From Fonticula alba ATCC 38817 (taxonomy: Eukaryota > Protista > Nucleariida): a DNA stretch of 17,980 nt. Position 1 is the stretch's first letter. The number at the start of each line of letters is the position of its first letter. The notes beneath the pieces were generated by a model. That model saw only the letters and a list, made by a program, of their open reading frames with translations. It did no database searches and was not told the origin of the DNA. The DNA lies in assembly GCA_000388065.2 (NCBI GenBank), contig KK198105.1; one strand, given 5' to 3'. The translations under genes and the position numbers were made by a program. Below are positions 1 to 17,980 of the stretch, one piece after another.

Positions 1-120
1 GACTCGAACCCATTCACAGGTTTTACCTGCTCTTTCCTAGACCTGAAAAAAAAAAAAAAATTATTAAATGTTTTTTATTTAATAAATAAAAAATCTATCA
101 GGGATTTTTTTTATGGTATC
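1..120 (-). repeat. Repeat module copy 1 (cut by window start): tRNA-like element, A15 tract, two hairpins
   Basis: Near-identical to 3929-4020 and 13847-13962. Hairpins are ttattaaat/atttaataa (61-85) and aaaaaatc/gatttttt. Confidence 0.95.
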
Positions 121-685: not shown

Positions 686-728
686 TTTTTTTTTAGTTGT
701 ATTTAAAGGGTGCTTTTCTGTTATAATT

Positions 729-2407: not shown

Positions 2408-3657
2408 TTTAAATTTTTATCACTGGTAGCCATATAAAATGTTAAACATTCTTATAAAACAACCCAATATAACTAATTAATAATAAAGCTAAATATCTCA
2501 CAAGAATAAATACCCCTAAAATCTATAATCATAAGCAATCATAACCCATAAAGATTCAAATAGACTTATACAATTTGTTAAAAAATAACCACCTCAGCTA
2601 GCCGAGGCTCTAGTTCATGATCAACCTATTTAGTGATGTACCTAACTTAAAATTAAAAATCTTAATAGATTCTTAATAATAAGAATTTGAGTAAGCCGAT
2701 GTTTCTAAGCATATCTAAATTTCTCTTTATTTTATAACAATAGGACTTTTAGAAAAATGATTCTGATACTTCATTTTTCTAGGGTTTAAAAATACTATAT
2801 TTTTTTTTAATCAAGAATATAGTATCTAGTTTATAATAATATATTCTTATACTAGTCAAATCTAGAATATTATTATATAGAAATAGCACTAAACCCCAAT
2901 AGACTACAAGACATGAAGATTATAAAGGACTACATTACAAACCTCCCCTATAAAAATAACATTTTAATCACAATGTAGAATTTATCAAGGACTAAATATA
3001 ACTATATTTACATTCATACTGATAATTTGTAAATAAGTCAATATTTACATAATTATGTAAATAACTTATTTACATAAGTTATTTTATAATACCTCTTCTT
3101 TCTCTTGTAGCCAAAGACTAGAGCACAGATAAGTACCATATAAACTACTATTTCAATATTAATAGAATTCAATTCATAAACTTTGGATTTTATAGCTAAA
3201 TGTCAGCTTCTTTCTATTTTTAACAACATGATATTTCAATATTAAGATTACAAAGTAAAGGATACACATAGTTAAGCTATTATACATAATATTTAAATAA
3301 CAAAAGAAGATAAATTAGACTACAAACCCTATGAATAAAAAAAAAAAAAAAAACCTTATCATGATCAGTTAAACATTACTAAACATTATTAATATTGAAA
3401 TATCAGTAGATATGACTAGAAAAGACTAATATAGTTATTTATAACTATATCACATATAAAAACTAAAGGATATAATATAACATCCAGCAAACAAACATAC
3501 ATATAAACTAACTAAGCCATTCAACTTTGAATAACTCTAATTTTTTAAATTTAGAGCTAAATTTAAAAATACTAAATTAGTATAGATTTTACTCTATTTC
3601 ATATACTCATAAAACCTAATAATTTAAAAAGGTAAGTACTATACATCATTAATAAAA

Positions 3658-3683
3658 TGGATAATTTAGTACTAAATTATCCA
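3658..3683. repeat. Perfect 26-bp palindrome tggataatttagtactaaattatcca
   Basis: Identical to its own reverse complement. Confidence 0.95.
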
Positions 3684-3900
3684 ATAAACACAATTTAATA
3701 TAAAAAACCCCCTAAAAATATTATAAACACTACCCACCACTAAAGCACTACTGATTTAACACTAAAACTTATAAATTAAAACAACCTTAACAAGACAAAA
3801 TTAAATAAAACATTCTAATATAAATTTTATAAATAATCATAAACTAAATCGGCCTGTACAGGCCTGGACCAAAAACCATACACTCCATCACTGAACAACA

Positions 3901-4040
3901 ACAACAAAGAATTATGATACAGGCAAGGGACTCGAACCCATTCACAGGTTTTACCTGCTCTTTCCTAGACCTGAAAAAAAAAAAAAAATTATTAAATGTT
4001 TTTTATTTAATAAATAAAAATTCCTAAATAGGAATTTTTT
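3901..4040 (-). repeat. Repeat module copy 2 with a different distal hairpin (aaaaattcct-aaat-aggaattttt)
   Basis: Direct sequence identity with copies 1 and 3 up to about 4020. Confidence 0.95.
3918..3975 (-). ncRNA. 58-nt tRNA-like element (t-element-like): canonical T-arm, reduced D-arm, non-canonical anticodon arm
   Basis: Minus strand TTCAGGT-CTAGGAAA-GAGC-AGGTAAAACCT-GTGA-ATGGG-TTCGAGT-CCCTT-GCCTGTA. The acceptor-like stem pairs 6 of 7. Expression is not shown. Confidence 0.6.
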
Positions 4041-4287
4041 ATATAGTATGTCTGCATGATTGATGAACAATCAATTATAATTGATTAACTATTAGATAGT
4101 GAGACTCTATTAAGAGTTAACTCTATTAATTCTTTCATATTTTATACTTGATCTACACCAGCCCTTGTTTCTGGCTTATTTCTATTAATTGCTGCAGTAT
4201 TTTCACTTAACTATAAACCTCTTAGAGTAATAGCCTTAATAAAACTAATCAATGTTATAATTGGGGATATACAGTCTTTTACATGGC

Positions 4288-4731
4288 CTATGAATTATCA
4301 TTTTTATTACTATCACTTAATAATTCTGGATTTTCATCCTTTATAATTTTAAAAATTCTTTCTTTATTAAAATTTATAAATTCATCAGAGTTTTTAATTA
4401 AATCTAAACTCTGATAAGGAATAGAGAGTTTTTCTTTCGCAACCATACCAAACTGTGGCTTTTGCTGACCTACTAAATTGGATTCTTTACTTATCAAATT
4501 TGCAGGGTTCCTGGCTGTTGATACGCTGGTACATTGCATTAAAATAGTTAGCCTATCTACTACCTTTTCTGCTGAATCACCGTCTTTTAATATAAAGGGA
4601 TGGTTTACATCCAGCTTTAAAGGTTCTAAAATTGCTTTAAAGTCTTCTCTTTTAGAATTTTTAATAAACGCTCCACATAATTTACTAGAACTACTGATTG
4701 AATAAGACCTTTTTATTAAATTACTAATCAT
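4288..4731 (-). CDS. Hypothetical protein (147 aa), gene B of the unknown two-gene cassette
   Basis: Intact ORF with an ATGA overlap with ORF289. A homologous decayed copy lies at 7686-8169. Confidence 0.7.
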   Translation of the reverse strand: MISNLIKRSYSISSSSKLCGAFIKNSKREDFKAILEPLKLDVNHPFILKDGDSAEKVVDRLTILMQCTSVSTARNPANLISKESNLVGQQKPQFGMVAKEKLSIPYQSLDLIKNSDEFINFNKERIFKIIKDENPELLSDSNKNDNS

Positions 4732-5696: not shown

Positions 5697-5734
5697 CACA
5701 AATAAAATATTTTTCATAAAAAAAAATTTTATAA
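5697..5734 (-). repeat. 38-bp exact copy of the start region of ORF731
   Basis: cacaaataaaatatttttcataaaaaaaaattttataa is identical to 17943-17980. Confidence 0.95.
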
Positions 5735-5917
5735 TTAAAACAAACTATAATATAAATACTTAAAAAACAAATCTCATTTAAAAAAATGAAATATAAATTA
5801 TATTGTGTGGCCTAAAAGCAATATTAAGAGATAGGTAATATCTGAGCATGTGTGTGTGCGAAAGATACATCCATAAACTATCATAGTGGTATGCTACGAT
5901 CAAAAGATCGGGAGCAT

Positions 5918-5989
5918 TGGGCTTAGTAGGAATCGAACCCACGTAGTATCCATCATGAGTGGAACGTTTTACCACTAAACTATAAGCCC
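5918..5989 (-). tRNA. trnI: tRNA with CAU anticodon, probably Ile (lysidine type), otherwise elongator Met
   Basis: GGGCTTA/TAAGCCC acceptor, loop CTCATGA, T-loop TTCGATT. It lacks initiator features. The GGGCTTATAGTTTA 5' end resembles organellar trnI(cau). Confidence 0.8.
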
Positions 5990-5991
5990 AA

Positions 5992-6076
5992 TACCCACTA
6001 TTGGACTCGAACCAATACTTCATAAACTGAAAACAGATTTTAAGTCTGTCGTGTCTGCCAGTTCCACCAAGCGGGC
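5992..6076 (-). tRNA. trnL: tRNA-Leu(UAA)
   Basis: GCCCGCT/AGTGGGT acceptor, ACAGA-CTTAAAA-TCTGT anticodon arm, long variable arm, TTCGAGT T-loop. Confidence 0.96.
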
Positions 6077-6081
6077 TATTT

Positions 6082-6260
6082 TTTGAATAACAACATAACT
6101 AATAATTTCCTAACAGGGCAAGATACGACAATCTCTTCAGGATTAGGAAATTCCTACGTTATAGCCTAAATAAATGCTATTATATTAGAAGCTTAAATCT
6201 GTTCGACACTAGATCGTAAAGGAATAGTAAAATAAATTAGACTGAATGGGGGTTATTTAA
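6082..6260 (+). ncRNA. rnpB: Candidate reduced mitochondrial RNase P RNA
   Basis: CR-I-like AGGAAATTCC (6145-6154), CR-IV-like AGtaaaAT (6226-6233), CR-V-like GACTGAATGGGGGTTAT (6240-6256). P4 AATTCCTA/TGGGGGTT forms 8 pairs including 3 G-U; P2 is TAATTT/AAATTA. Ends are approximate. Confidence 0.55.
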
Positions 6261-6272
6261 CTTTATAAATAA

Positions 6273-6344
6273 GAGTTTATAGCTCAGTGGTAGAGCAGCG
6301 GACTTTTAATCCGTTGGTCGCAGGTTCGAGTCCTGTTAAACTCA
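6273..6344 (+). tRNA. trnK: tRNA-Lys(UUU)
   Basis: GAGTTTA/TAAACTC acceptor, GCGGA-CTTTTAA-TCCGT anticodon arm, canonical D and T arms. Confidence 0.97.
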
Positions 6345-6346
6345 TT

Positions 6347-6429
6347 GAGGGTGTGGCTGAGCGGTTTAAAGCAATAGACTGTAAATCTATCCACGAATGT
6401 GAGCATGGGTTCGAATCCCATCGCCCTCA
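6347..6429 (+). tRNA. trnY: tRNA-Tyr(GUA)
   Basis: GAGGGTG/CGCCCTC acceptor, ATAGA-CTGTAAA-TCTAT anticodon arm, long variable arm. Confidence 0.97.
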
Positions 6430-6685
6430 AATAGATAATATATTAATAATCTTCCAGATAATATAGCCATTATATATTATATTTTATGCCACAAGTAGAT
6501 TTATTAACTTTTTTTAATCTTTCTTTTATGTTTTGTGTATTTTTTACAATTAGTTATAACATGATATATTCATATTGTGTTAATATGGAAAAAGTATCAT
6601 TAGTTAGAGAAGTTTTATCTAATTCTAATAAAAATTAACTAAATTTAAGAACTAATATTAACAAAATATAAGGAGGAAACTCCAT

Positions 6686-6757
6686 TGAGGAATAGCCAAG
6701 TGGTAAGGCAATGGATTTTGATTTCATGACGCATGGGTTCGAATCCCATTTTCTCAA
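6686..6757 (+). tRNA. trnQ: tRNA-Gln(UUG)
   Basis: TGAGGAA/TTTCTCA acceptor, ATGGA-TTTTGAT-TTCAT anticodon arm, ATGGG-TTCGAAT-CCCAT T-arm. Confidence 0.96.
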
Positions 6758-6768
6758 ACTAAAATTAT

Positions 6769-8232: not shown

Positions 8233-8466
8233 ATGTGTAAGGAACAAAAGTTTGTTTTCTCTAAAGTAAGTTGGTTCATTCCAAAATCTGATGTAGCAGA
8301 AAAATTATATATTACAGATTATATTCAAAAAAATGAACAAATGCTCTTGTATCATGTAAAGAATAGAGCTAGTGGTGGATTCCTATTTTCAATAAAAGAC
8401 TTCTTAGATGAAATAGATTTAAATTTATTTCATCTAATTAAATGGAAACAATTTAAATTTTATTAG
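8233..8466 (+). CDS. Small hypothetical ORF (77 aa)
   Basis: Open frame only; no family recognised. Confidence 0.3.
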   Translation: MCKEQKFVFSKVSWFIPKSDVAEKLYITDYIQKNEQMLLYHVKNRASGGFLFSIKDFLDEIDLNLFHLIKWKQFKFY

Positions 8467-8626: not shown

Positions 8627-8653
8627 AATTATTTGTTGTGTATTTACTTTAGT
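8627..8653 (+). repeat. Left arm of a 27-bp inverted repeat (partner 13804-13830)
   Basis: aattatttgttgtgtatttactttagt vs reverse complement aattctttgttgtgtagttactttagt, 25 of 27 identical. Confidence 0.85.
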
Positions 8654-8770: not shown

Positions 8771-9061
8771 ATGACATTTGATACTCTTTTTACTGTTTTT
8801 TTTATTCTATTGGTGTTGTCTCTTCTTTTTTTAGGGGGTTCATCATATTTGAAGGCGATAGTTTTATTGGAGGTTTGTGTTTTATTGAATTTTATGTATT
8901 TATCTTTTCAGGTGTCGTTATTTGGTGATCTAGCTGGTTTATCGTTTTTATTTTATGTTTTAGCGGTGGCGGCTAGTGAGACATCGGTAGGTTTTGCGTT
9001 GTTGGTTGCTTATTACAAAAATGTTGGGTCTATTTCTTTTAGTCCTTTATCAAGAAATTAA
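8771..9061 (+). CDS. nad4L: NADH dehydrogenase subunit 4L
   Basis: 96 aa with LLEVCVLLN and VLAVAASETSVGFALLVAYY (Nad4L A-A-x-E-x-x-x-G motif). ATG at 8771; the stop overlaps the nad5 ATG (TAATG). Confidence 0.93.
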   Translation: MTFDTLFTVFFILLVLSLLFLGGSSYLKAIVLLEVCVLLNFMYLSFQVSLFGDLAGLSFLFYVLAVAASETSVGFALLVAYYKNVGSISFSPLSRN

Positions 9062-10980
9062 TGTTGTTGTTGTTGTTGTTGTTGCCTTTATTATCTGGTA
9101 TTTTGACTTTATTGTTTGGGTTTTTTATAGGTAGAAATGGGGCGGTATTAATGACTGTTTTTAATATGTTTTTATTGGTGGTTTTATCATTTAAGTTATT
9201 TTTTGACGTGGGGGTTTTAGAGACTCCTATTTCTTTAGAAATTAGTGAGTGGTTTAGTTCGGGTTCATTGGTAGTTAATTGGTCTTTGCATGTGGATGCT
9301 TTGACTGTTACTATGTTGGTGGTTATTAATACTATTTCTTTTTTAGTTCATGCTTATTCTGTGTCTTATATGGAGAATGATCCTCATTTACAAAGGTTTA
9401 TGGCTTATTTGTCATTGTTTACTTTTTTTATGATAGTTTTAGTTACAGCAGACAACTTAGTTCAATCATTTGTTGGTTGGGAAGGTGTGGGGGTTATAAG
9501 CTATCTATTGATTAATTTTTGGTTTACTAGGATAAATGCTAATAAGTCGGCTATTAAGGCATTGTTGATGAATAGGGTGGGTGACTTGGGTATTTGTTTG
9601 GCTATGTATAGCTGTTTTTATACATTTGAGACATTGGATTATTCTTCGATTATGTTGTTAGTGTCTCATTCATTAGAGGATTTTATAGTTTTATTGGGTT
9701 TTGAATATAATGCTATTACTATTATATCATTTTTTATTTTTTTAGGGGCAGTTGGTAAATCTGCTCAGATTGGCTTACATACATGGTTGCCGGATGCTAT
9801 GGAGGGGCCTACTCCAGTGTCTGCACTTATTCATGCAGCTACTATGGTTACAGCAGGGGTGTTTATATTGATTAGGCTTTCAGGATTAATTGAGTATTCT
9901 ACAGCTGCATTAACGTTTATTACTATTGTGGGTGCAATAACATGTTTTTTTGCTGCATCTACTGCATTGGTTCAAAATGATATGAAGCGTATTATTGCCT
10001 TTTCTACATGTAGTCAATTAGGGTATATGGTTTTTGCATGTGGATTGTCTGGTTATACTGTTAGTTTGTTCCATTTAGCTAACCATGCTATATTTAAAGC
10101 ATTGTTGTTCTTAGCAGCAGGGGTTGTTATCCATGCGATAAATGATGAGCAAGATATAAGAAGAATGGGGGGGTTAATAAACCATTTACCATTTACTTAT
10201 TCATTAACATTGATAGGTTCATTAGCATTAATAGGTTTTCCTTATTTAACTGGGTATTATTCAAAAGATGTAATAGTTGAGTTAACTATAGCAAAACAAT
10301 CAACTCATGGATACTTTGCTTTATGGCTGGGGTCTATAACAGCTTTATTTACAGCATATTATTCTACAAGGTTATTATTTTATACTTTCTTAAATTATCC
10401 AAATAATTCTAAAAAAGTATTTAAAATAGCTCATGAAGGTTCATATCTAATGCTAATCCCATTATTTATATTAGGTATAGGAAGTATATACTCTGGATTC
10501 ATTACAAAAGAAATATTCTTAGGATGGGGATCTACATTTTGGAACAATTCTATATTTATTCATCCAGAAAACTATATTATAATAGACACACTATTCCTAC
10601 CAGACTATATGAAACTAATACCTGTATTTGCATCTTTCATAGGAATATACCTATTCATAAACATACAAATACTATACACAACACCATTTATTAAGAGCAA
10701 TAAACTTATGAAAGAAATACACAAATTCCTAAGCAATAAATGGTACTTTGACAAAATATACAACACAATAACAAAAACAATAACAAACATAGCATACAAC
10801 ATCACATACAACACAATAGACACAGGATACATAAACTCTATAACACTAGGAGCCATATACAAACACACCACAAACATAAACAAAACACAAAACAATACAA
10901 GCAAAAACCCACTAAACACACTAATCACAACAATATTCATAACAACAACACTAATCCTAACACTCTTTCTAATCAACTAA
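9061..10980 (+). CDS. nad5: NADH dehydrogenase subunit 5
   Basis: Motifs YMENDPH, FVGWEGVG, NRVGD, GKSAQIGLHTWLPDAMEGPTPVSALIHAATMVTAGV, KRIIAFSTCSQLGYM, GYYSKD. Confidence 0.99.
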   Translation: MLLLLLLLPLLSGILTLLFGFFIGRNGAVLMTVFNMFLLVVLSFKLFFDVGVLETPISLEISEWFSSGSLVVNWSLHVDALTVTMLVVINTISFLVHAYSVSYMENDPHLQRFMAYLSLFTFFMIVLVTADNLVQSFVGWEGVGVISYLLINFWFTRINANKSAIKALLMNRVGDLGICLAMYSCFYTFETLDYSSIMLLVSHSLEDFIVLLGFEYNAITIISFFIFLGAVGKSAQIGLHTWLPDAMEGPTPVSALIHAATMVTAGVFILIRLSGLIEYSTAALTFITIVGAITCFFAASTALVQNDMKRIIAFSTCSQLGYMVFACGLSGYTVSLFHLANHAIFKALLFLAAGVVIHAINDEQDIRRMGGLINHLPFTYSLTLIGSLALIGFPYLTGYYSKDVIVELTIAKQSTHGYFALWLGSITALFTAYYSTRLLFYTFLNYPNNSKKVFKIAHEGSYLMLIPLFILGIGSIYSGFITKEIFLGWGSTFWNNSIFIHPENYIIIDTLFLPDYMKLIPVFASFIGIYLFINIQILYTTPFIKSNKLMKEIHKFLSNKWYFDKIYNTITKTITNIAYNITYNTIDTGYINSITLGAIYKHTTNINKTQNNTSKNPLNTLITTIFITTTLILTLFLIN

Positions 10981-10989
10981 AAAAAAAAA

Positions 10990-11421
10990 ATGATAGTATC
11001 AAGACTAAACTATACTTCTTTTTCTTTAGTTAATACACCTAGCATAGAACACAGTGTATTCTTATACTCTGCTATTCTAGCTATGACTCTTTCTCTAGTA
11101 ATATATACTGCTGGATACTGTGTAACAAATAACCACAGAACAGACCTAAACAAAATAAGTGCTTATGAGTGTGGATACAGTCCAAACTCTCACGAATCAA
11201 ACCAATACAATGCAAACTTCATAATAATATGTCTATTATTCCTACTAATAGACCTAGAAATACTATTCCTAGTACCATTCCTATACACTGTTGACTCCAT
11301 AGACACTACCACATGGAATATCTTCATATACTGTATGTGCACTATCATAGGAGGAATAATATTCGAACTACTAACAAGCTCGTTCGGAAAACTAGGTAAA
11401 ATCATCAAACAAAACAAATAA
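10990..11421 (+). CDS. nad3: NADH dehydrogenase subunit 3 (divergent)
   Basis: KISAYECGY and LLFLLIDLEILFLVP motifs. It has an N-terminal extension and an atypical C-terminus. Confidence 0.9.
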   Translation: MIVSRLNYTSFSLVNTPSIEHSVFLYSAILAMTLSLVIYTAGYCVTNNHRTDLNKISAYECGYSPNSHESNQYNANFIIICLLFLLIDLEILFLVPFLYTVDSIDTTTWNIFIYCMCTIIGGIIFELLTSSFGKLGKIIKQNK

Positions 11422-11422
11422 A

Positions 11423-11489
11423 GAGTTTATAGCTCAACGGCTAGAGCAAGTATATACACCTGATATGGGTTCGAATCCCATTAAACTCC
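11423..11489 (+). ncRNA. tRNA-like element with trnK-identical acceptor stem and shortened anticodon region
   Basis: GAGTTTA-TA-GCTC-AACGGCTA-GAGC-A-(16 nt)-ATGGG-TTCGAAT-CCCAT-TAAACTC-C. Only 16 nt lie between position 26 and the T-stem (normally 21-22). Confidence 0.75.
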
Positions 11490-12107
11490 ATAAGAAATAA
11501 ATATTATAAACACATTGGGGATTTACAGTATGTAAAGTAATTTATCTGTACTATTTATATAACAAGATAGTACATACTCTACCTGAATTTTATGGCTAAA
11601 TCCTTGTTGTATTTTAAATTTAGTTTTTGTGATAAAAACATAAATTAATTTAATTATATAGTAGACACAACAGTCGTGTATATTATGGGATTTTTAATAT
11701 AAACTATTAAAATACCCATAGATCTATATAGCCCTATACAACAATATTATATAGGGCTAACTCTAACAATACATAAATAATGTAGTGTTTATCTAGAATA
11801 TATTCATGTGTTAAATCTTATATAAATATATAATAAATATATTATACCTAATCTAACCTGAAGAGGAATAAATAATATTATAAAATAAAATAAAAATAAT
11901 TTTTATTTTATAAATGTGTATTTTATAATACTAATACATTAATAAAACAATATAGAACCAGACATGTAAGTGTCAACCCCATATAATAAAAATAATAAGT
12001 TCTTAGGTTAGATTTAGTATGCTATAGACTAACTATCAAAACTACATAAATATTTATATTCATTAGGTAGATAAAAAACTTATTGATCTAGTACATAATA
12101 CTTATAC

Positions 12108-12139
12108 TAAATATAAATATAATATTATATTTATATTTA
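12108..12139. repeat. Perfect 32-bp AT-only palindrome
   Basis: taaatataaatataat followed by attatatttatattta. Confidence 0.9.
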
Positions 12140-13803
12140 AATACACTTATTCAGGGTACATCCTAACTATGATTAGATAAGGTATAAGTTTCTAAACGAT
12201 GGTCTGTCAGTACCTTCCCTTTATTAAATTCTAAATAAAATAGATATAACTAAAAAAAGTATATAATATACAATACATTATAAATAATTCTATTAAATTA
12301 ATAAATGTATTGGGGACTGCTAAATAACCCAAATTATTAAAACATATAATATCTAACTCTAAAATATAAAGCCTTAAAATATGAATAAGCACCCCAATAC
12401 ATCCTATAGCTAAAATATTATACTATAATATTAATAGCATATATTCTAAGTCTTATTTTGCGGGATAATTAATAAACAGAAATTATTTTGGACTGAAAAA
12501 AAAACTAGGGGCCTAGTTTTTTTAATATAAACTAATTTTAAACAGGTTCCTATTAAAACATATTGGTAATAACTAATAATAGGTGCTGGTTCTAATATGT
12601 TTTAATAATTTTAGGTTTATTAAATAAAAACAATATTGTTTAAATATTGTTTGTACCTTATATTTTAAAGATATATATATTATACCAATAATGTAGGCTG
12701 AATTAGCATATTTAAATAGAATTATAAACCCCCTACTTTTAAAATGTCCTATCAAGCTTCTCTAAATACACAGCTATTATTTCTATCTAGAGAGTTATAT
12801 TCTAGATTATAACCCACTAGTTTTAGCCAGTACAGCCTTGGACAAATACATCAACCCTTCTTCACTATAAGCCTATACTATAGGAGCATTGTGTTAGAGG
12901 AAATACACTTAATAAATTGAGTTCACTAACATATTGGTGACTGCAAGCCATGATTTTATATAAGAAAGTCTTCACATATAATTCATTCATAAGTAAAGAG
13001 CTCTAACTCTAGTAGGTTCTAACTATTAGATAGTAAGAACTAACACAGTTAGCCTCACACCTACTACCAAACACTATTTTGATTAAGAACTTAATCACTA
13101 ATTTAAAATTAACATTAGAATTACATAATAAACCTAAAGACATTATAATACAGATAAATTAATCAAAATTACAATAATATAAACTAGTCTAAACCTACGC
13201 ACTAAAAATAAAATTATAAATGTTTTTATATTAATAGTGTAAAACTAAGATTATACCCATTAGCTATTGTAATGCTATATCTTCCTAGTAGACCTGTGCT
13301 ATATCTAAAACAATATAAATATAACCCAAACAATATCTACTAGGAAAATACTACTATATAAATAACTGCAAGTAGTGTATACACACCTATCAACTCAATT
13401 ATAATTTAGCCAGAGTCTTAACAGAGCTTAGTTCACGATTATTTCCTAAAATAATATCCAATAAATACATTTTCTAAGAAATAGCTTAACTAAAATAAAA
13501 CAATGATACAGAGCTAGAATTAACCCTTGTAATTCATAAGTCTATAACCATAGATTTATGAATCTAACGAGATACACACTGGAAAATCATAAGGGTATTA
13601 TGACTCATATAATATTAGCACTAAAAATGATATAAATACTACAAAAACTATAGCTCTCAACCCCACCCATAACACCATTACTTTAACAAGAAAAATAAAC
13701 TGCTATAAAATTAAGACAGAACAAAATACTGTATATAGCCACATATAGATGTCCTGTACTATTCAATTCGTATAATATCTTTTTAATTAAAACCATAATA
13801 CTA

Positions 13804-13830
13804 ACTAAAGTAACTACACAACAAAGAATT
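13804..13830 (-). repeat. Right arm of the 27-bp inverted repeat, overlapping the left edge of module copy 3
   Basis: Reverse complement matches 8627-8653 at 25 of 27 positions. Confidence 0.85.
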
Positions 13831-13962
13831 AGTTTACAGGCAAGGGGATTCGAACCCATTCACAGGTAAACCTGCTCTTTCCTAGACCTGAAAAAAAAAA
13901 AATTATTAAATGTTTTTTATTTAATAAATAAAAAATCTATCAGGGATTTTTTTTATGGTATC
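13818..13962 (-). repeat. Repeat module copy 3 (tRNA-like element 13835-13892, A12 tract, two hairpins)
   Basis: Matches copy 1 through atggtatc and copy 2 from acaacaaagaatta. Confidence 0.95.
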
Positions 13963-13976
13963 GTCTTTGTTTATAT

Positions 13977-14927
13977 TTAATATTTGTTATTGTTTTGGTT
14001 GATAATGTTGTTTGTCCATGTAGTGTAGTTGTATTGGTGTGTTGTTTTGTTTGTTATGTTGTGTTGTAGTATGCTTCCTATTGTTGGGTTTGTTTGCCTG
14101 TTGTGGTTGTTAATGTTTGGGTTTGTTGTGTGGTTTGCTTGTAATGGAGTTAATGTTTCTCTGAGTTCATTTGGTGTGTTGTTTTGTGTTGTTTCTTGAG
14201 TGATTCCTATAGTTTTTAAATAGCTTATCCAATTTTGGTGGATGTTGTTTTGTGTTGCTTCTATTGCTAATTTTGTTAGTTCTTTGTTTGGAGTTTTTGG
14301 GTGGGCTTTTGCGTAGTTTTCTTTAACTGTTTTTGCAAATTCTTTATATTCACTCTCTGACATTAAGTTTAATGCTCGGGCAGTGCTGTTGTAGAATTGA
14401 GTGTAAGAGTGGGAGTTTGATAGGGCTGTGCAATGTAATGATTGTGAGTTGTGAAAGAATTCTACTGCTTTGTCTTCTGAATAAGTTTCGGCGTATTCTT
14501 TGAATTCTTCAGAATAAGTTGTGTCTAGTTTATTGTCTAATTTATCTAGCCATTCTATAATTTCACTGGCTTTTAATAGTCCTGCTGTTTTATATGAATT
14601 CATATGAGAGTTCATATAAATATAGTGTATTCCTTTATAAGTATCGAATCTAGTAGGAGATCCCTCAGATACTAATGTTTTATTTAAGATATAGGCTTTT
14701 TTTAAGTCTTCTGCTTGAGAGTTAAATAATAGTTGGAATAAAGATCCTTTACTCATTATGAATGAGTCGATTAATGGTCTTATTAAATAAGGCTTAGAAA
14801 TCTTTGTAGGGATTGTTTCAGGGAGTTTTTCTGTGATTATTACACTTGATATTTCACCCCAGTATCCCATATCAAAAAGGATTAGGTTAACAGTAGAAAG
14901 AAGCATATTATACAAATTAGATAGCAT
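13977..14927 (-). CDS. Hypothetical protein (316 aa) with a Thr/Asn/Gln-rich low-complexity C-terminus
   Basis: Long intact ORF in AT-rich DNA; no family recognised. Confidence 0.65.
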   Translation of the reverse strand: MLSNLYNMLLSTVNLILFDMGYWGEISSVIITEKLPETIPTKISKPYLIRPLIDSFIMSKGSLFQLLFNSQAEDLKKAYILNKTLVSEGSPTRFDTYKGIHYIYMNSHMNSYKTAGLLKASEIIEWLDKLDNKLDTTYSEEFKEYAETYSEDKAVEFFHNSQSLHCTALSNSHSYTQFYNSTARALNLMSESEYKEFAKTVKENYAKAHPKTPNKELTKLAIEATQNNIHQNWISYLKTIGITQETTQNNTPNELRETLTPLQANHTTNPNINNHNRQTNPTIGSILQHNITNKTTHQYNYTTWTNNIINQNNNKY

Positions 14928-15717
14928 TTTTTTTTTTTTTCACGTCATCATTTTTTGTAAAGCATTTTTTAGTGTTAGTTGCTTTTTCTAACATTTTAGT
15001 AGGGTGTATTCCTTCTGGTATAATTTTAACCTTAATGTTTTTTTTGATGTTGGCAATTCTATTTAATTTTTTTATGTTTAATTCTTTTGTGTTTGGTGTA
15101 GTTTTAGCTAGTTTAGGGCTTATGTTCTCTTCTTTATGGTTTTTGATAAAGAAGTTTACTAGTCTTACTCTTAGTCTTTTCATTTGTAATATTCTATTTT
15201 TTAGAGCTACTGTTCTTTTTCTAGATTTTGTAGTATAGAATTCCATGCGATTTTTTCTAGAATATATTGTTAAATGTTTAGTTTGTACATTCCTAAAATG
15301 ATTTAATGATACAAGTAGTTTTTTAGGGAGTCCATCTACTCCGTTTAAGTTTTTAATGTGTTGTAATATTAAGTTTTTATAGACTGAAAGTTTTCTTGAG
15401 CCCAACATTAAAAAATGTTTTTTAGATTGTCTTCCCATTCTAATGTTTATGTATTTACTTATTGGTAATGATTCAGATGTTAGGTACATATAGTATTCAT
15501 ATGGGCTAACACCATCATTCTCTCTTGATAATATATATACTTGATTTAAAGCATTATGCATTTTTTGACTTTTACCATTTTTTATAAAACCTTTTCTTAT
15601 TTTTTCTGTTACAAAATTATCTTGGTAATCTAAGTGTTTATAACCTGCTCCTAAGTTTATTTTTTTAGGGGAGTGACTATAAGATTTATGATTATAATTA
15701 TATATTATATTATTCAT
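14917..15717 (-). CDS. rps7: Divergent ribosomal protein S7 with N- and C-terminal extensions
   Basis: KIRKGFIKNGKSQKMHNAL resembles the S7 (M)KxGKK-helix. SPYEYY...PISKYINIRMGRQ...RKLSVYKNLI follows the S7 P-x6-R-x-G...R spacing. The protein is strongly basic. Confidence 0.7.
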   Translation of the reverse strand: MNNIIYNYNHKSYSHSPKKINLGAGYKHLDYQDNFVTEKIRKGFIKNGKSQKMHNALNQVYILSRENDGVSPYEYYMYLTSESLPISKYINIRMGRQSKKHFLMLGSRKLSVYKNLILQHIKNLNGVDGLPKKLLVSLNHFRNVQTKHLTIYSRKNRMEFYTTKSRKRTVALKNRILQMKRLRVRLVNFFIKNHKEENISPKLAKTTPNTKELNIKKLNRIANIKKNIKVKIIPEGIHPTKMLEKATNTKKCFTKNDDVKKKKNAI

Positions 15718-15767
15718 ATAATATGAAATATAATTAATTTACAAACTATATCTGGGTACTTAATAAA

Positions 15768-17963
15768 TCAATATTTAAAACATGTTGAGACTATTTCCTC
15801 ATCTATTTCTTTAAGAAGTAGACAGAGCTTATATATCTCAATGGCTTTTTTTATCTCTACTATACTGGGAGTATAGTCCATTAACACCTGCCTAGTTTTT
15901 AAACATTTTTTTAAATAATCTATTAATAAAATAATATTTTCATTCTCTATCTCTTGATAAATATTATTAAATAGCATAATGTTTAACTTTCCTTCAGCTA
16001 ATAACTTAATTAATTCTGACGTAAAACAACTATCAGGCTTTGTTAATTTAAACCATCTTAAATGTTCTAATGATTTGTTGTGTGTTTTATATTTAATTCT
16101 ATGTATCTTTTTTTCTAGATTAGATGAATCTAAGTTACTATTTACTAAAAAAGTCCTTAACTCATCTTTAGTAAAGTCTAATTCAGGAAATAACAAGTTT
16201 AAAGTGTCTTTAATAAATTCTGTATTATTATACTTATATAATTCTGTTTTTACTCTCCTTGTATAAAGAGAGTTTAAGTCTTTAGATAAAACTACATTAT
16301 TATATGTATTACAATTAATATAATTTTTCATTATATTAAATAAGAAATCCCTTCCTCTAAAAGAACCCTGCTCATAAAAAGGCTCCCCCCTTTTAGATAA
16401 AGGTTTTATCGCCCCCTTTTTAAAAAAGAATTTTGTCCTATTAGTATATTTTGTTAATCCTATTCTTTTGTTTTGTCTCAATATTCTTTTCTTTACTCTA
16501 TGGGCTATAACCCTTTTATAATGATAAGTAAATAAACAATTGGCATATTTATGGACCATTCCAAAGATAGATTTTCTTAACCTAGGTTTATTTTTAGTTA
16601 AGAAAAATTTATTACATCTTTTTCTAAGCCTCAATAGACGATATGGTTTATATCTTAATATCCTAACGTTTTTAATCTTTAATTTAATTCTTCTTTCTAT
16701 TTTTAAGTTAGCTAAATCTTGTTTATCTTGGATCTTTTGTCTAGCTGCATACTTAAAAGAAAATTTCCTTTCAACTTTTTGAAATAAAAATCCTCTAAAA
16801 TGGCCTATCCTAGCCATAGTTGAAAATGTGTTAGGATCCATTATATTAAAAGTATTAAAAAACCTGGATGTTAATCTAACATCCACTGCATTTCTTGCTA
16901 GACTATAAATAAGGCGCTTGTCCTCTAAAAAATATGGCCATTTAATATTTTTATTATTAATTTTATTATAATCTTTTAACTCTGAGAAAGAGTTAAAATA
17001 ATATAATTTAGATTTACCCTCTTTTTTAATATATATAGGATCAGGAAAAATATCTGGGTTATTTAATAAAAAATTATTAAATGATTTAGAACTTTTAGTT
17101 TTTAAATTATACTTATAACGACCTACAACATATTTAAATATAGCTAATCGTGACCTCCTCCACTTAAATTTATACTTAGATCTAATAGTTAACTTATCTT
17201 GTTTATACTTTAAAATATAAAAAGTGTTAAAAGAGCCATGAATTAAACGCTCTAATCTATAAAATAAAACTTTATCTTTTAAATTAGCCCTATTACTAAT
17301 AATTTTAAAATATTTATTAATAGCCAACCTTATAAAATGAAATAAGCCCCTATTCAACTCAGTAAACGTATTCAACCCACCAAATTTATAATTCTTTGAA
17401 TACACTTCACTAAACTCAGATTTCTTATAAGAATTATACCCAGAAATCTTTAAAAATAACTCCCTCTCATACCTCTTATACTTAATAAAAGCATGAGAAG
17501 AACCCTTACGCTCATAAAAATACCTATAATTATAAAAAAAAAAAGGATCTCTAACACCAACATACTTCAACCTCCCATATTTTTTTAAATCATATAACAT
17601 CAAAAACCTCCTCTTATTAAAAAAATTACGCCTCCTTAAAAAAAAAGGAAGCCTCCTAAATTGACCCAAAACATCTTTAGATTCACACTTCAAATTCACC
17701 AACCTACCCCTCTTATTAAAAACCCTATAAAACTTAATAGAATTAGGCAAAGAAACATGAACCCTCCTAAACTCCAACTGAGACAAATCATCAATAACAC
17801 CAGAAACCGATAAAACCGGCAAACCAACCCCACCAGCTGCCAACAAATCCAATACAGCCCCCTTCAAAAACAACAACTCCAAATCATTAAAATCCAACAA
17901 ATAAACAGACCTAATACCGTCCAAATTCAAATACTCTCCTCTCACAAATAAAATATTTTTCAT
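15768..17963 (-). CDS. Large basic (Lys/Arg-rich) hypothetical protein, possibly a highly expanded mitoribosomal protein
   Basis: 731-codon ORF directly upstream of and co-oriented with rps7. No diagnostic motif recognised. Confidence 0.7.
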   Translation of the reverse strand: MKNILFVRGEYLNLDGIRSVYLLDFNDLELLFLKGAVLDLLAAGGVGLPVLSVSGVIDDLSQLEFRRVHVSLPNSIKFYRVFNKRGRLVNLKCESKDVLGQFRRLPFFLRRRNFFNKRRFLMLYDLKKYGRLKYVGVRDPFFFYNYRYFYERKGSSHAFIKYKRYERELFLKISGYNSYKKSEFSEVYSKNYKFGGLNTFTELNRGLFHFIRLAINKYFKIISNRANLKDKVLFYRLERLIHGSFNTFYILKYKQDKLTIRSKYKFKWRRSRLAIFKYVVGRYKYNLKTKSSKSFNNFLLNNPDIFPDPIYIKKEGKSKLYYFNSFSELKDYNKINNKNIKWPYFLEDKRLIYSLARNAVDVRLTSRFFNTFNIMDPNTFSTMARIGHFRGFLFQKVERKFSFKYAARQKIQDKQDLANLKIERRIKLKIKNVRILRYKPYRLLRLRKRCNKFFLTKNKPRLRKSIFGMVHKYANCLFTYHYKRVIAHRVKKRILRQNKRIGLTKYTNRTKFFFKKGAIKPLSKRGEPFYEQGSFRGRDFLFNIMKNYINCNTYNNVVLSKDLNSLYTRRVKTELYKYNNTEFIKDTLNLLFPELDFTKDELRTFLVNSNLDSSNLEKKIHRIKYKTHNKSLEHLRWFKLTKPDSCFTSELIKLLAEGKLNIMLFNNIYQEIENENIILLIDYLKKCLKTRQVLMDYTPSIVEIKKAIEIYKLCLLLKEIDEEIVSTCFKY

Positions 17964-17980
17964 AAAAAAAAATTTTATAA
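17943..17980 (-). repeat. 38-bp repeat (ORF731 start region), identical to 5697-5734; may extend past the window end
   Basis: Exact match up to the last base of the window. Confidence 0.95.

What the first reader, a model, noticed from the sequence alone, without database searches (positions are those of the whole stretch)
3901..4040. Three-copy module: hairpins, U-tract and a shrunken tRNA-like element downstream of minus-strand ORFs
On the minus strand each copy reads hairpin, hairpin, T12-15, a 58-nt tRNA mimic, then aattctttgttgt. The T-arm and acceptor-like stem are kept, while the D-arm and anticodon arm are reduced. All three copies lie downstream of a minus-strand unknown ORF. Established: RNase P and RNase Z recognise mainly the acceptor/T-arm, and plant mitochondrial t-elements define mRNA ends this way. 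Inference: the module is a portable 3'-processing or termination signal, a replication priming site, or a tRNA-derived short mobile element.
Basis: partly seen in the sequence, partly recalled or inferred. Interest (0 to 1): 0.8.

Follow-up and report, generated by a model that had tools for sequence, protein, structure and literature searches.

The report
Repeated tRNA-remnant module ending mitochondrial genes
The mitochondrial DNA of the amoeba Fonticula alba repeats a ~150-letter block (two weak hairpins, a run of T, a shrunken tRNA look-alike) just after unrelated genes; RNA stops at its upstream edge, so it probably ends messages, but no cutting has been shown.

Summary
The window is the whole scaffold KK198105.1 of Fonticula alba and is mitochondrial. 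The repeat is real. Copies lie at 1-120 (cut by the scaffold end), 3901-4053 and 13818-13966, all on the minus strand and each behind a different orphan ORF.

Each copy reads A/U hairpin, A/U hairpin, U12-15, then a 58-nt tRNA remnant. The remnant has a 7-bp closing stem with one mismatch, no D-arm, an anticodon stem with a 3-4-nt loop, and a T-arm. The T-arm carries GGTTCRANYCC, the motif used to find plant t-elements. Rfam's tRNA model and ARAGORN do not call it.

In two RNA runs, contigs cover the upstream ORFs and stop at 13961-13964. That is the upstream edge of the module, about 70 nt before the predicted RNase P site. Nothing covers the tRNA-like core or the next 2.3 kb.

A second anticodon-less tRNA remnant starts 1 nt after the nad3 stop codon. 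Copies evolve in concert within strains, so their near-identity does not show selection.

My best reading (0.45) is a portable 3'-end cassette of the t-element kind, with the mechanism unresolved. The main rival is a selfish or neutral recombining repeat.

The scan had already noted the same family on another mitochondrial scaffold of this genome (s1-065386).

The parts
3901..4053 (-). Module copy c2, whole repeat unit, about 235 nt after the stop of orphan ORF147 (4288-4731)
4016..4039 (-). c2 hairpin 1: 10-bp A/U-rich stem, loop AUUU, -8.6 kcal/mol. The sequence differs from c1/c3 but a stem is kept.
3989..4013 (-). c2 hairpin 2: 9-bp all-A/U stem, 7-nt loop, -3.0 kcal/mol. Identical in all copies and directly followed by the U-run.
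   Evidence: (D5/D6)
3974..3988 (-). T15 run (U15 in the RNA). The last two U can form acceptor positions 1-2.
3918..3975 (-). c2 tRNA-like core, 58 nt. It has a closing stem of 7 positions with 6 pairs, a linker of about 10 nt in place of the D-arm, a 5-bp stem with the 3-nt loop AAA in place of the anticodon arm, and a T-arm GGGTTCGAGTCCC.
   Evidence: not called by tRNA models
3901..3917 (-). Tail TCATAATTCTTTGTTGT, shared with c3 but absent from the copy type seen in other strains
13818..13966 (-). Module copy c3, starting about 11-15 nt after the stop of orphan ORF316 (13977-14927). Hairpin 1 is 13930-13952, hairpin 2 13903-13927, T12 13891-13902, core 13835-13892, tail 13818-13834.
1..120 (-). 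Module copy c1, about 70 nt after the stop of orphan ORF164 (191-685). It is cut in the T-loop by the scaffold end. T15 is at 46-60.
13961..13964 (-). Place where RNA-run contigs from two upstream contexts end. DNA-run contigs continue through the module.
   Evidence: (records 12, 13, 17 against 23-26)
11423..11489 (+). Second kind of anticodon-less tRNA remnant, 1 nt after the nad3 stop. It has the tRNA-Lys acceptor stem and D-arm, a module-like middle and a T-arm. Rfam tRNA score 47 bits; ARAGORN finds no anticodon.
8627..8653 (+). 27-mer 25/27 identical to the tail of c3 (13804-13830, minus strand), in sense orientation 119 nt upstream of the likely nad4L ATG (8772)
   Evidence: (I23)
13189..13236 (-). 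Possible decayed partial copy (hairpin 2, broken T-run, start of core), 71-77% alike. Not statistically secure.
   Evidence: (D2)

Best explanation
The module is a portable 3'-end cassette for mitochondrial transcription units. It is transcribed as the trailer of the upstream gene.

Proposed mechanism: the A/U hairpins and U-tract slow or stop the phage-type RNA polymerase, or hold back 3'-to-5' trimming. The tRNA remnant keeps the 12-position acceptor/T-arm stack that RNase P and RNase Z read. It is cut out of any read-through RNA, as plant mitochondrial t-elements and MALAT1's mascRNA are. Stable mRNA therefore ends in the upstream part of the module, and the spacer beyond stays silent. The module spreads and is homogenised by recombination.

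Shown: the repeat, its anatomy, its sense orientation behind unrelated ORFs, the tRNA-type T-arm motif, and the end of RNA contig coverage at the module's upstream edge.

Inferred: any cleavage, any termination, and the enzymes involved.
For: - There are three copies, all in sense orientation behind three unrelated ORFs.
- GGTTCRANYCC is the motif used to find Arabidopsis t-elements (PMC1920247). It occurs only in the 5 tRNAs, the nad3 tail and the modules: 8 hits against 0.04 expected.
- The closing stem and the middle hairpin are robust, with pair probabilities of 0.84-0.97. The 7+5 stack geometry is kept.
- In RNA runs X23 and X24, ORF316/ORF266 have depth 12-14 and a second locus has depth 48-60. 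Their contigs end at 13964, 13964 and 13961.
- The same runs show no RNA contig on the module core, and depth 0 over 11600-13800. DNA run X5 covers both the module and 13000-13800.
- The RNA contig crosses a 14-nt homopolymer and 17% GC windows.
- nad3 RNA (depth 18-26) ends at 11396-11410, just before a second anticodon-less tRNA remnant at 11423.
- The differences between copies and strains fall mostly in loops or flanks: the middle-hairpin loop is AAA, UUUU or UU, and T-loop position 59 is G or A. The one exception seen in a stem is c3's uncompensated extra C in the T-stem.
- Acceptor pair 2-71 changes from U x U to C-G in the copy type that has a different flank.
- Hairpin 1 differs between c2 and c1/c3 on both arms yet still forms a stem.
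Against: - RNA coverage stops about 70 nt upstream of the predicted RNase P site, before both hairpins. The tRNA remnant may therefore never define the mRNA end.
- Only assembled contigs were available, from libraries of unrecorded type. nad5, a real gene, is also almost uncovered.
- The two RNA contigs share their last 30 nt, so they are not independent.
- tRNA covariance models do not recognise the core.
- The T-stem is weak, and c3 has an uncompensated extra C.
- Folding energies are no better than shuffles.
- The hairpins are very weak as terminators (-3 kcal/mol).
- Copies are homogenised within strains: one variant is at about 3.5x depth in X5. Conservation among copies is therefore not evidence of selection.
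- Sense orientation in three or four copies is only weak statistical evidence, roughly 1 in 8 to 1 in 16 by chance.
Confidence: 0.45

Rival explanations
1. It is a selfish or neutral dispersed repeat, like the repetitive hairpin-forming elements, double-hairpin elements or GC clusters of other mitochondrial genomes. It would be a fragment containing a tRNA remnant that spreads by recombination or gene conversion. It sits after ORFs only because spacers tolerate it, and RNA would end there anyway.
For: - Copies c1 and c2 are 99-100% identical over 95-112 nt while their flanks are unrelated.
- In strain X5, all of about 3.5 copies carry one variant that differs from the reference copies. This is concerted evolution.
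- The scaffold and every Logan contig break inside the repeat.
- Arrangements differ between strains beyond 11613.
- A strain 97.9% identical to the reference has an A-run plus hairpin 2 in inverted orientation about 90 nt downstream of the c2 site. The reference holds a decayed version there.
- Possible 5-nt flank duplications exist: ATCAT at c2 and TAAAC at c3.
- The 27-mer upstream of nad4L resembles an empty site.
- Hairpin repeats are known invaders of opisthokont mitochondrial DNA (PMC2800124).
Against: - By my estimate, the flank duplications are within chance expectation: about 0.3 per copy, about 0.09 for both.
- No terminal inverted repeats were seen on a complete copy.
- All visible copies are in sense orientation behind ORFs.
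- A second and, by the scan's own unchecked notes, a third kind of anticodon-less tRNA remnant sit at gene ends in this genome. Neutral decay does not predict that.
- In the nad3 tail only the anticodon arm is destroyed, while the acceptor stem, D-arm and T-arm stay perfect.
Confidence: 0.3
2. It is a transcription terminator or 3' stabiliser made only of the hairpins and the U-tract. The phage-type polymerase stops at hairpin 1 or 2 plus the U-rich stretch, and the tRNA remnant is a passenger.
For: - Hairpin 2 is directly followed by U12-15. Hairpin 1 is followed by UUUUUUAUUUAUU.
- RNA contigs end upstream of the core, and the core is absent from the RNA contigs.
- Both hairpins appear in the MFE and centroid folds of c2.
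Against: - The stems are all A/U with -3 kcal/mol for hairpin 2, far weaker than known intrinsic or T7 class I terminators.
- The consensus terminator scan does not pick them up.
- This reading does not explain why the tRNA-like core is the best-kept part across strains while the U-run length and its junction vary.
- The nad3 unit ends at a tRNA remnant that has no such hairpins.
Confidence: 0.13
3. It is a replication origin or primer site. The hairpins form on displaced single-stranded DNA, the primer starts in the T-run, and the tRNA-like fold marks primer processing, as at vertebrate OriL or the multi-copy yeast ori elements.
For: - It is a multi-copy, well-conserved intergenic element with hairpins next to a homopolymer run.
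- Copy c3 lies near a turn in cumulative GC skew.
Against: - The other copies do not coincide with skew turns. The skew follows ORF composition.
- The consistent sense orientation behind genes and the RNA boundary point to an RNA-level role.
- No DNA-end data exist.
Confidence: 0.07
4. It is a working small RNA or tRNA gene of unusual shape.
For: It has a T-arm motif, a closing stem and a size of 58 nt. Armless mitochondrial tRNAs exist in animals.
Against: - The loop in the anticodon position is 3-4 nt and varies (AAA, UUUU, UU), so it has no anticodon.
- tRNA models do not call it.
- ARAGORN's metazoan-mitochondrial mode gives conflicting calls on opposite strands.
Confidence: 0.03

Closest known systems
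Plant mitochondrial t-elements (wheat; Arabidopsis cox1, ccmC, nad6, rps4; Ogura orf138). Forner et al. 2007, PMC1920247
   Same: - Both are non-canonical tRNA-like folds that keep the pseudouridine-arm motif GGTTCRANYCC and an acceptor-like stem.
- Both lie next to mRNA ends, often behind lineage-specific or chimeric ORFs.
- Both are proposed substrates of RNase P and RNase Z.
   Different: - Here the remnant is embedded in a repeated 150-nt module with two A/U hairpins and a U12-15 run.
- The module is multi-copy and homogenised.
- The organism is a holomycotan amoeba.
- RNA coverage ends about 70 nt upstream of the element rather than at its edge, and no cleavage product has been seen.
tRNA punctuation of mitochondrial polycistronic transcripts (animals, fungi)
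   Same: tRNA-shaped structures at gene borders serve as cutting marks. In this window, real tRNAs and remnants sit within 1 nt of neighbours or of stop codons.
   Different: The elements here cannot decode, and they are followed by silent spacers rather than by the next gene.
MALAT1 / MEN-beta 3' end: triple-helix element followed by mascRNA (PMC8457004)
   Same: A tRNA-like RNA of about 58 nt with a reduced anticodon loop lies directly after an A/U-rich structured stretch. RNase P cleavage there makes the mature 3' end.
   Different: MALAT1 is nuclear and has no sequence relation to this module. Here the tract before the cut is U, not A. No triple helix has been tested.
Repetitive hairpin-forming elements and double-hairpin elements of sponge and chytrid mitochondrial DNA (PMC2800124)
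   Same: They are short, dispersed, hairpin-forming intergenic repeats that spread within mitochondrial genomes of opisthokonts.
   Different: Those elements are mostly G+C-rich hairpins with no tRNA remnant and no fixed orientation relative to genes.

Membership tests
Canonical tRNA gene | Recognised by a tRNA covariance model or cloverleaf finder | tested here: not met
   No RF00005 hit at E<=10 on 171-181 nt around c2 and c3. ARAGORN finds none in standard mode and gives inconsistent opposite-strand calls in metazoan-mitochondrial mode.
Canonical tRNA gene | 7-nt anticodon loop | tested here: not met
   The loop is 3-4 nt and varies: AAA, UUUU, UU.
t-element (plant mitochondrial type) | Pseudouridine-arm motif GGTTCRANYCC outside a canonical tRNA | tested here: met
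   Present at 3928-3938 and 13846-13856 on the minus strand. The window has 8 hits against 0.04 expected. The motif definition comes from PMC1920247.
t-element (plant mitochondrial type) | Non-canonical cloverleaf with an acceptor-like stem stacked on the T-arm | tested here: inconclusive
   The closing stem has 6 of 7 pairs with probability 0.84-0.97. The T-stem has 4 of 5 pairs with probability of only about 0.17, and c3 has an extra C. No stem varies among copies, so there is no covariation test.
t-element (plant mitochondrial type) | mRNA termini coincide with the ends of the element | tested here: inconclusive
   RNA contigs end at 13961-13964, which is 69-73 nt upstream of the predicted 5' end of the core. 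No RNA lies on the core or beyond it. Contigs only, no read ends.
t-element (plant mitochondrial type) | Cleavage by RNase P / RNase Z and a released small RNA, often with non-encoded C or CCA | not testable with these tools
   No small-RNA run or read-level RNA data could be reached.
Intrinsic (hairpin plus U-tract) terminator | Stable G+C-rich stem directly followed by a U-run | tested here: not met
   A U-run directly follows hairpin 2, but the stem is all A/U at -3.0 kcal/mol. The terminator scan does not list it.
Mobile hairpin repeat / MITE-like element | Target-site duplications, terminal inverted repeats, or filled and empty sites | tested here: inconclusive
   The 5-nt flank matches (ATCAT, TAAAC) are within chance. 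An inverted A-run plus hairpin 2 lies downstream of c2 in another strain. The 27-mer at nad4L could be an empty site.
Mitochondrial replication origin | Strand-asymmetry switch or nascent-strand ends at the element | tested here: not met
   Only c3 lies near a skew turn. DNA ends are not testable.

The most novel reading that the evidence does not exclude
The module is a self-spreading 'gene-ending cassette'. It is a mobile unit that carries its own 3'-end machinery, and it lands behind newly arisen orphan or chimeric ORFs and makes them expressible.

The proposed machinery is a mitochondrial counterpart of MALAT1's element-plus-mascRNA design. RNase P would cut at the tRNA remnant. The U-tail left behind would fold back on the A/U stem of hairpin 1, possibly as a U-A-U triple helix, and protect the end.
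Probability: 0.1. Interest if true: 0.75.

Novelty: new variant of a known kind. Interest (0 to 1): 0.48.

Why it matters
How mitochondrial messages get their 3' ends is poorly understood outside animals, yeasts and plants. Nothing is published on this for Fonticula or the other nucleariids, the closest relatives of fungi.

A repeated cassette that joins weak hairpins, a U-tract and a tRNA remnant would show that tRNA-shaped cutting marks without decoding function arose outside plants. This genome holds at least one further kind of anticodon-less tRNA remnant at a gene end, which adds to that case.

It would also give a simple, testable system for how orphan mitochondrial genes acquire expression signals. 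In addition, it explains why this mitochondrial genome assembles in pieces: the module and other short repeats break every assembly examined.

Tried and rejected
- Rfam at a permissive threshold on each copy gave no tRNA hit and no other meaningful family.
- ARAGORN in relaxed and metazoan-mitochondrial modes gave only inconsistent calls.
- Two scans of JGI metagenome contigs, one with a strict and one with a looser core pattern, gave 0 matches.
- Homologue searches with ORF289 and ORF316, meant to reach relatives or paralogues next to further copies, found nothing but ORF316 itself.
- Pfam on all unknown ORFs at E<=10 gave nothing useful.
- Exact-protein look-ups could not reach the other mitochondrial scaffolds of the reference, so the copies noted there were not examined.
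- A local alignment of the spacers downstream of c2 and c3 scored 41 against 32.8 +/- 3.2 in shuffles (maximum 44). That is not significant, so I dropped the idea of a long shared duplication.
- The unknown ORFs are not frameshifted standard genes. The standard code fits (nad5 is intact) and TGA=Trp adds no long ORFs in the spacers.
- Replication-origin reading: the skew turns do not track the copies.

Full report
**What the window is.** The window is the entire scaffold KK198105.1 of the Fonticula alba assembly GCA_000388065.2.
- It is mitochondrial. It carries nad4L-nad5-nad3 on the plus strand, tatC on the minus strand and a divergent tRNA cluster at 5917-6759.
- G+C is 21-33%, and the standard genetic code fits.
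- The other ORFs (164, 147, 289, 316, 266 and 731 aa) have no Pfam match. ORF289 and ORF316 have no homologue among 5.8 billion proteins.
- Both scaffold ends lie in repeats. Position 1 is inside the T-loop of module copy c1. The last 38 nt repeat 5697-5734 and include the ATG of ORF731.

**The observation.** Three minus-strand copies exist: c1 at 1-120 (truncated), c2 at 3901-4053 and c3 at 13818-13966. No other long repeat in the window compares with them. Read on the minus strand, each copy has five parts:
- Hairpin 1. In c1 and c3 it has 8 bp. In c2 it has 10 bp with changes on both arms.
- Hairpin 2. It has 9 A/U pairs and is identical in all copies.
- A T-run: T15 in c1 and c2, T12 in c3.
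- A tRNA-like core.
- In c2 and c3, the tail AATTCTTTGTTGT.

The ORFs upstream of the three copies are unrelated to each other. The repeated unit is therefore the module itself and not a duplicated gene end.

**The core.** It consists of:
- an acceptor-like stem of seven positions with six pairs (U x U at 2-71);
- a linker of about 10 nt in place of the D-arm;
- a 5-bp stem with a 3-nt loop where the anticodon arm should be;
- a 3-nt variable region;
- a T-arm with four of five pairs;
- a 3' strand continuous with the acceptor stem.

This keeps the 7+5 stack that RNase P and RNase Z are known to read (PMC1920247; PMC3790967).

The T-arm carries GGTTCRANYCC, the motif Forner et al. used to find Arabidopsis t-elements. 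In the window the motif occurs eight times against 0.04 expected by chance. The hits are the five tRNAs, the element behind nad3, c2 and c3. The core is therefore tRNA-derived.

It is not a tRNA:
- The Rfam tRNA model gives no hit even at E<=10.
- ARAGORN gives nothing consistent.
- Folding energies are no better than shuffles.
- The T-stem pairs with a probability of only about 0.17.
- c3 has an uncompensated extra C in the T-stem.

**A second remnant.** One nucleotide after the nad3 stop lies a 67-nt element at 11423-11489.
- It has the acceptor stem and D-arm of tRNA-Lys and a perfect T-arm.
- Its anticodon arm is replaced by a stretch that resembles the middle of the module.
- Damage confined to the anticodon arm is not what random decay predicts.
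- The scan's unchecked notes report three more module copies and a further anticodon-less tRNA on other mitochondrial scaffolds. I could not reach those scaffolds.

**RNA evidence (window 9000-14999).** Only Logan contigs were available, and the library type is not on record.
- In RNA runs X23 and X24, ORF316/ORF266 are covered at depth 12-14.
- Contig 12 runs without a single difference from beyond 14999 down to 13964.
- A second, more abundant contig (depth 60 in X23, 48 in X24) comes from another locus that shares 13964-13993. It ends at 13964 in X23 and at 13961 in X24.
- No RNA contig lies on the rest of the module, and depth is 0 from 13800 down to 11600.
- The soil DNA run X5 does have short repeat nodes across the module (13837-13910, 13905-13962, 13933-13993) at 2-3.7 times single-copy depth. 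It also has normal depth on 13000-13800.
- The RNA contig crosses a 14-nt homopolymer (14927-14940) and windows of 17% G+C. The hairpin part of the module has 15% G+C, so composition alone does not explain the stop.
- nad3 RNA (depth 18-26) ends at 11396-11410, just before the remnant at 11423. Depth is 0-1 after it.

Caveats on the RNA evidence:
- nad5 is almost uncovered, so the libraries are selective. They may capture RNAs that carry the A9-13 runs found just before several start codons.
- The two contigs ending at 13964 share their last 30 nt, so they are not independent.
- Coverage normally fades some tens of nucleotides before a true end.

Taken at face value, the ORF316 message ends in or near hairpin 1.

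**Variation among strains.** Logan contigs from other samples are 97.9-100% identical to the window in genes and spacers.
- Every one of these contigs breaks inside the module or at other short repeats.
- Downstream of nad3 they depart from the reference after 11613. They run into another module copy whose tail is GCGCATTTAAAATAA and which is followed 290 nt later by a 131-aa ORF in the same orientation.
- In X5, one 92-nt node at about 3.5 times single-copy depth carries this tail, a UUUU loop in the middle hairpin, and AUC between the U-run and the core. The copies of one strain share one variant, which means the family evolves in concert.
- In that variant, acceptor pair 2-71 is C-G instead of U x U, and pair 1-72 is lost. 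The count stays at six of seven pairs.
- The other differences seen lie in loops or flanks, except the extra C of c3. There are too few events for a covariation test.
- A 97.9%-identical strain has an A-run plus hairpin 2 in inverted orientation about 90 nt downstream of the c2 site. The reference holds a decayed version at about 3801-3838.

**Interpretation.** The module marks the boundary between expressed gene cassettes and silent, strain-variable spacers. It does so in sense orientation and contains a tRNA-derived fold with the geometry that tRNA-processing enzymes use. I give these odds:

| Reading | Confidence |
|---|---|
| 3'-end cassette in which the tRNA remnant acts as a t-element-like cutting mark and the hairpins and U-tract stop or protect | 0.45 |
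| Selfish or neutral recombining repeat | 0.30 |
| Hairpin/U-tract terminator alone, with the remnant as passenger | 0.13 |
| Replication origin | 0.07 |
| Working small RNA or tRNA gene | 0.03 |

The RNA boundary supports some 3'-end role. Because it lies upstream of the hairpins, it does not support the simple picture in which RNase P sets the mRNA end.

**Comparison and novelty.**
- The closest known system is the plant mitochondrial t-element. The motif test is met. The structure and end-coincidence tests are inconclusive. Cleavage is untestable here.
- The design also recalls MALAT1's structured 3' end followed by mascRNA.
- I found no paper on Fonticula mitochondrial RNA processing or on these elements.
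- New here are the lineage, the composite and portable form, and the presence of several independent anticodon-less remnants in one genome.
- The scan had already found the same family on another scaffold of this genome (s1-065386).

Noticed in passing
window 10975-11004; L026:1-620: nad3 has two upstream contexts. One is nad5-nad3, as in the scaffold. In the other, an unknown ORF of at least 190 aa with no Pfam hit runs into the same A-run and ATG. RNA contigs show the second context (depth 18-26), while nad5 itself is nearly uncovered.
   Followed up: partly
window 10979-10989 (+), 14928-14940 (-), 686-694 (-): Runs of 9-13 A lie directly before the ATG of nad3, ORF316 and ORF164. They may be a translation-start feature of this mitochondrion. 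They may also explain which mitochondrial RNAs appear in the RNA libraries.
   Followed up: no
window 11613 onward; L002:2826-4307: Other strains (several 2025 runs, one soil run) are more than 99.8% identical up to 11613 and then carry completely different sequence. That sequence includes a 131-aa paralogue of the 77-aa ORF at 8233-8466 and a 36-nt piece of ORF164 (465-500). The spacers are reshuffled between strains.
   Followed up: partly
window 3801-3838 and L017:1-30: An inverted A-run plus hairpin 2 lies about 90 nt downstream of c2. It is intact in a strain 97.9% identical to the reference and decayed in the reference. With c2 it would form a long inverted repeat around the tRNA-like core.
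   Followed up: partly
window 3851-3864 (-): There is a perfect palindrome GGCCTGTACAGGCC 55-68 nt after the c2 core. It reads like the 3' end of the core (GCCTGTA) joined to its own reverse complement. c3 has TACAGGAC at a similar distance (13751-13758).
   Followed up: no
window 5697-5734 and 17943-17980: A 38-nt exact repeat holds the start codon and first seven codons of ORF731. The internal copy opens only a 21-codon ORF upstream of ORF289. The scaffold ends in this repeat.
   Followed up: partly
window 13977-17963 (-): Orphan ORFs 731, 266 and 316 have no detectable relatives. ORF316 and at least the end of ORF266 are covered by RNA contigs at depth 12-14, so they are expressed lineage-specific genes. 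ORF731 and ORF266 are very basic.
   Followed up: partly
window 2417-4287 and 11500-13976: These are ORF-free, palindrome-rich spacers of 1.5-2.4 kb (for example, perfect palindromes at 12108-12139 and 3658-3683). No Rfam hit was found in either.
   Followed up: partly
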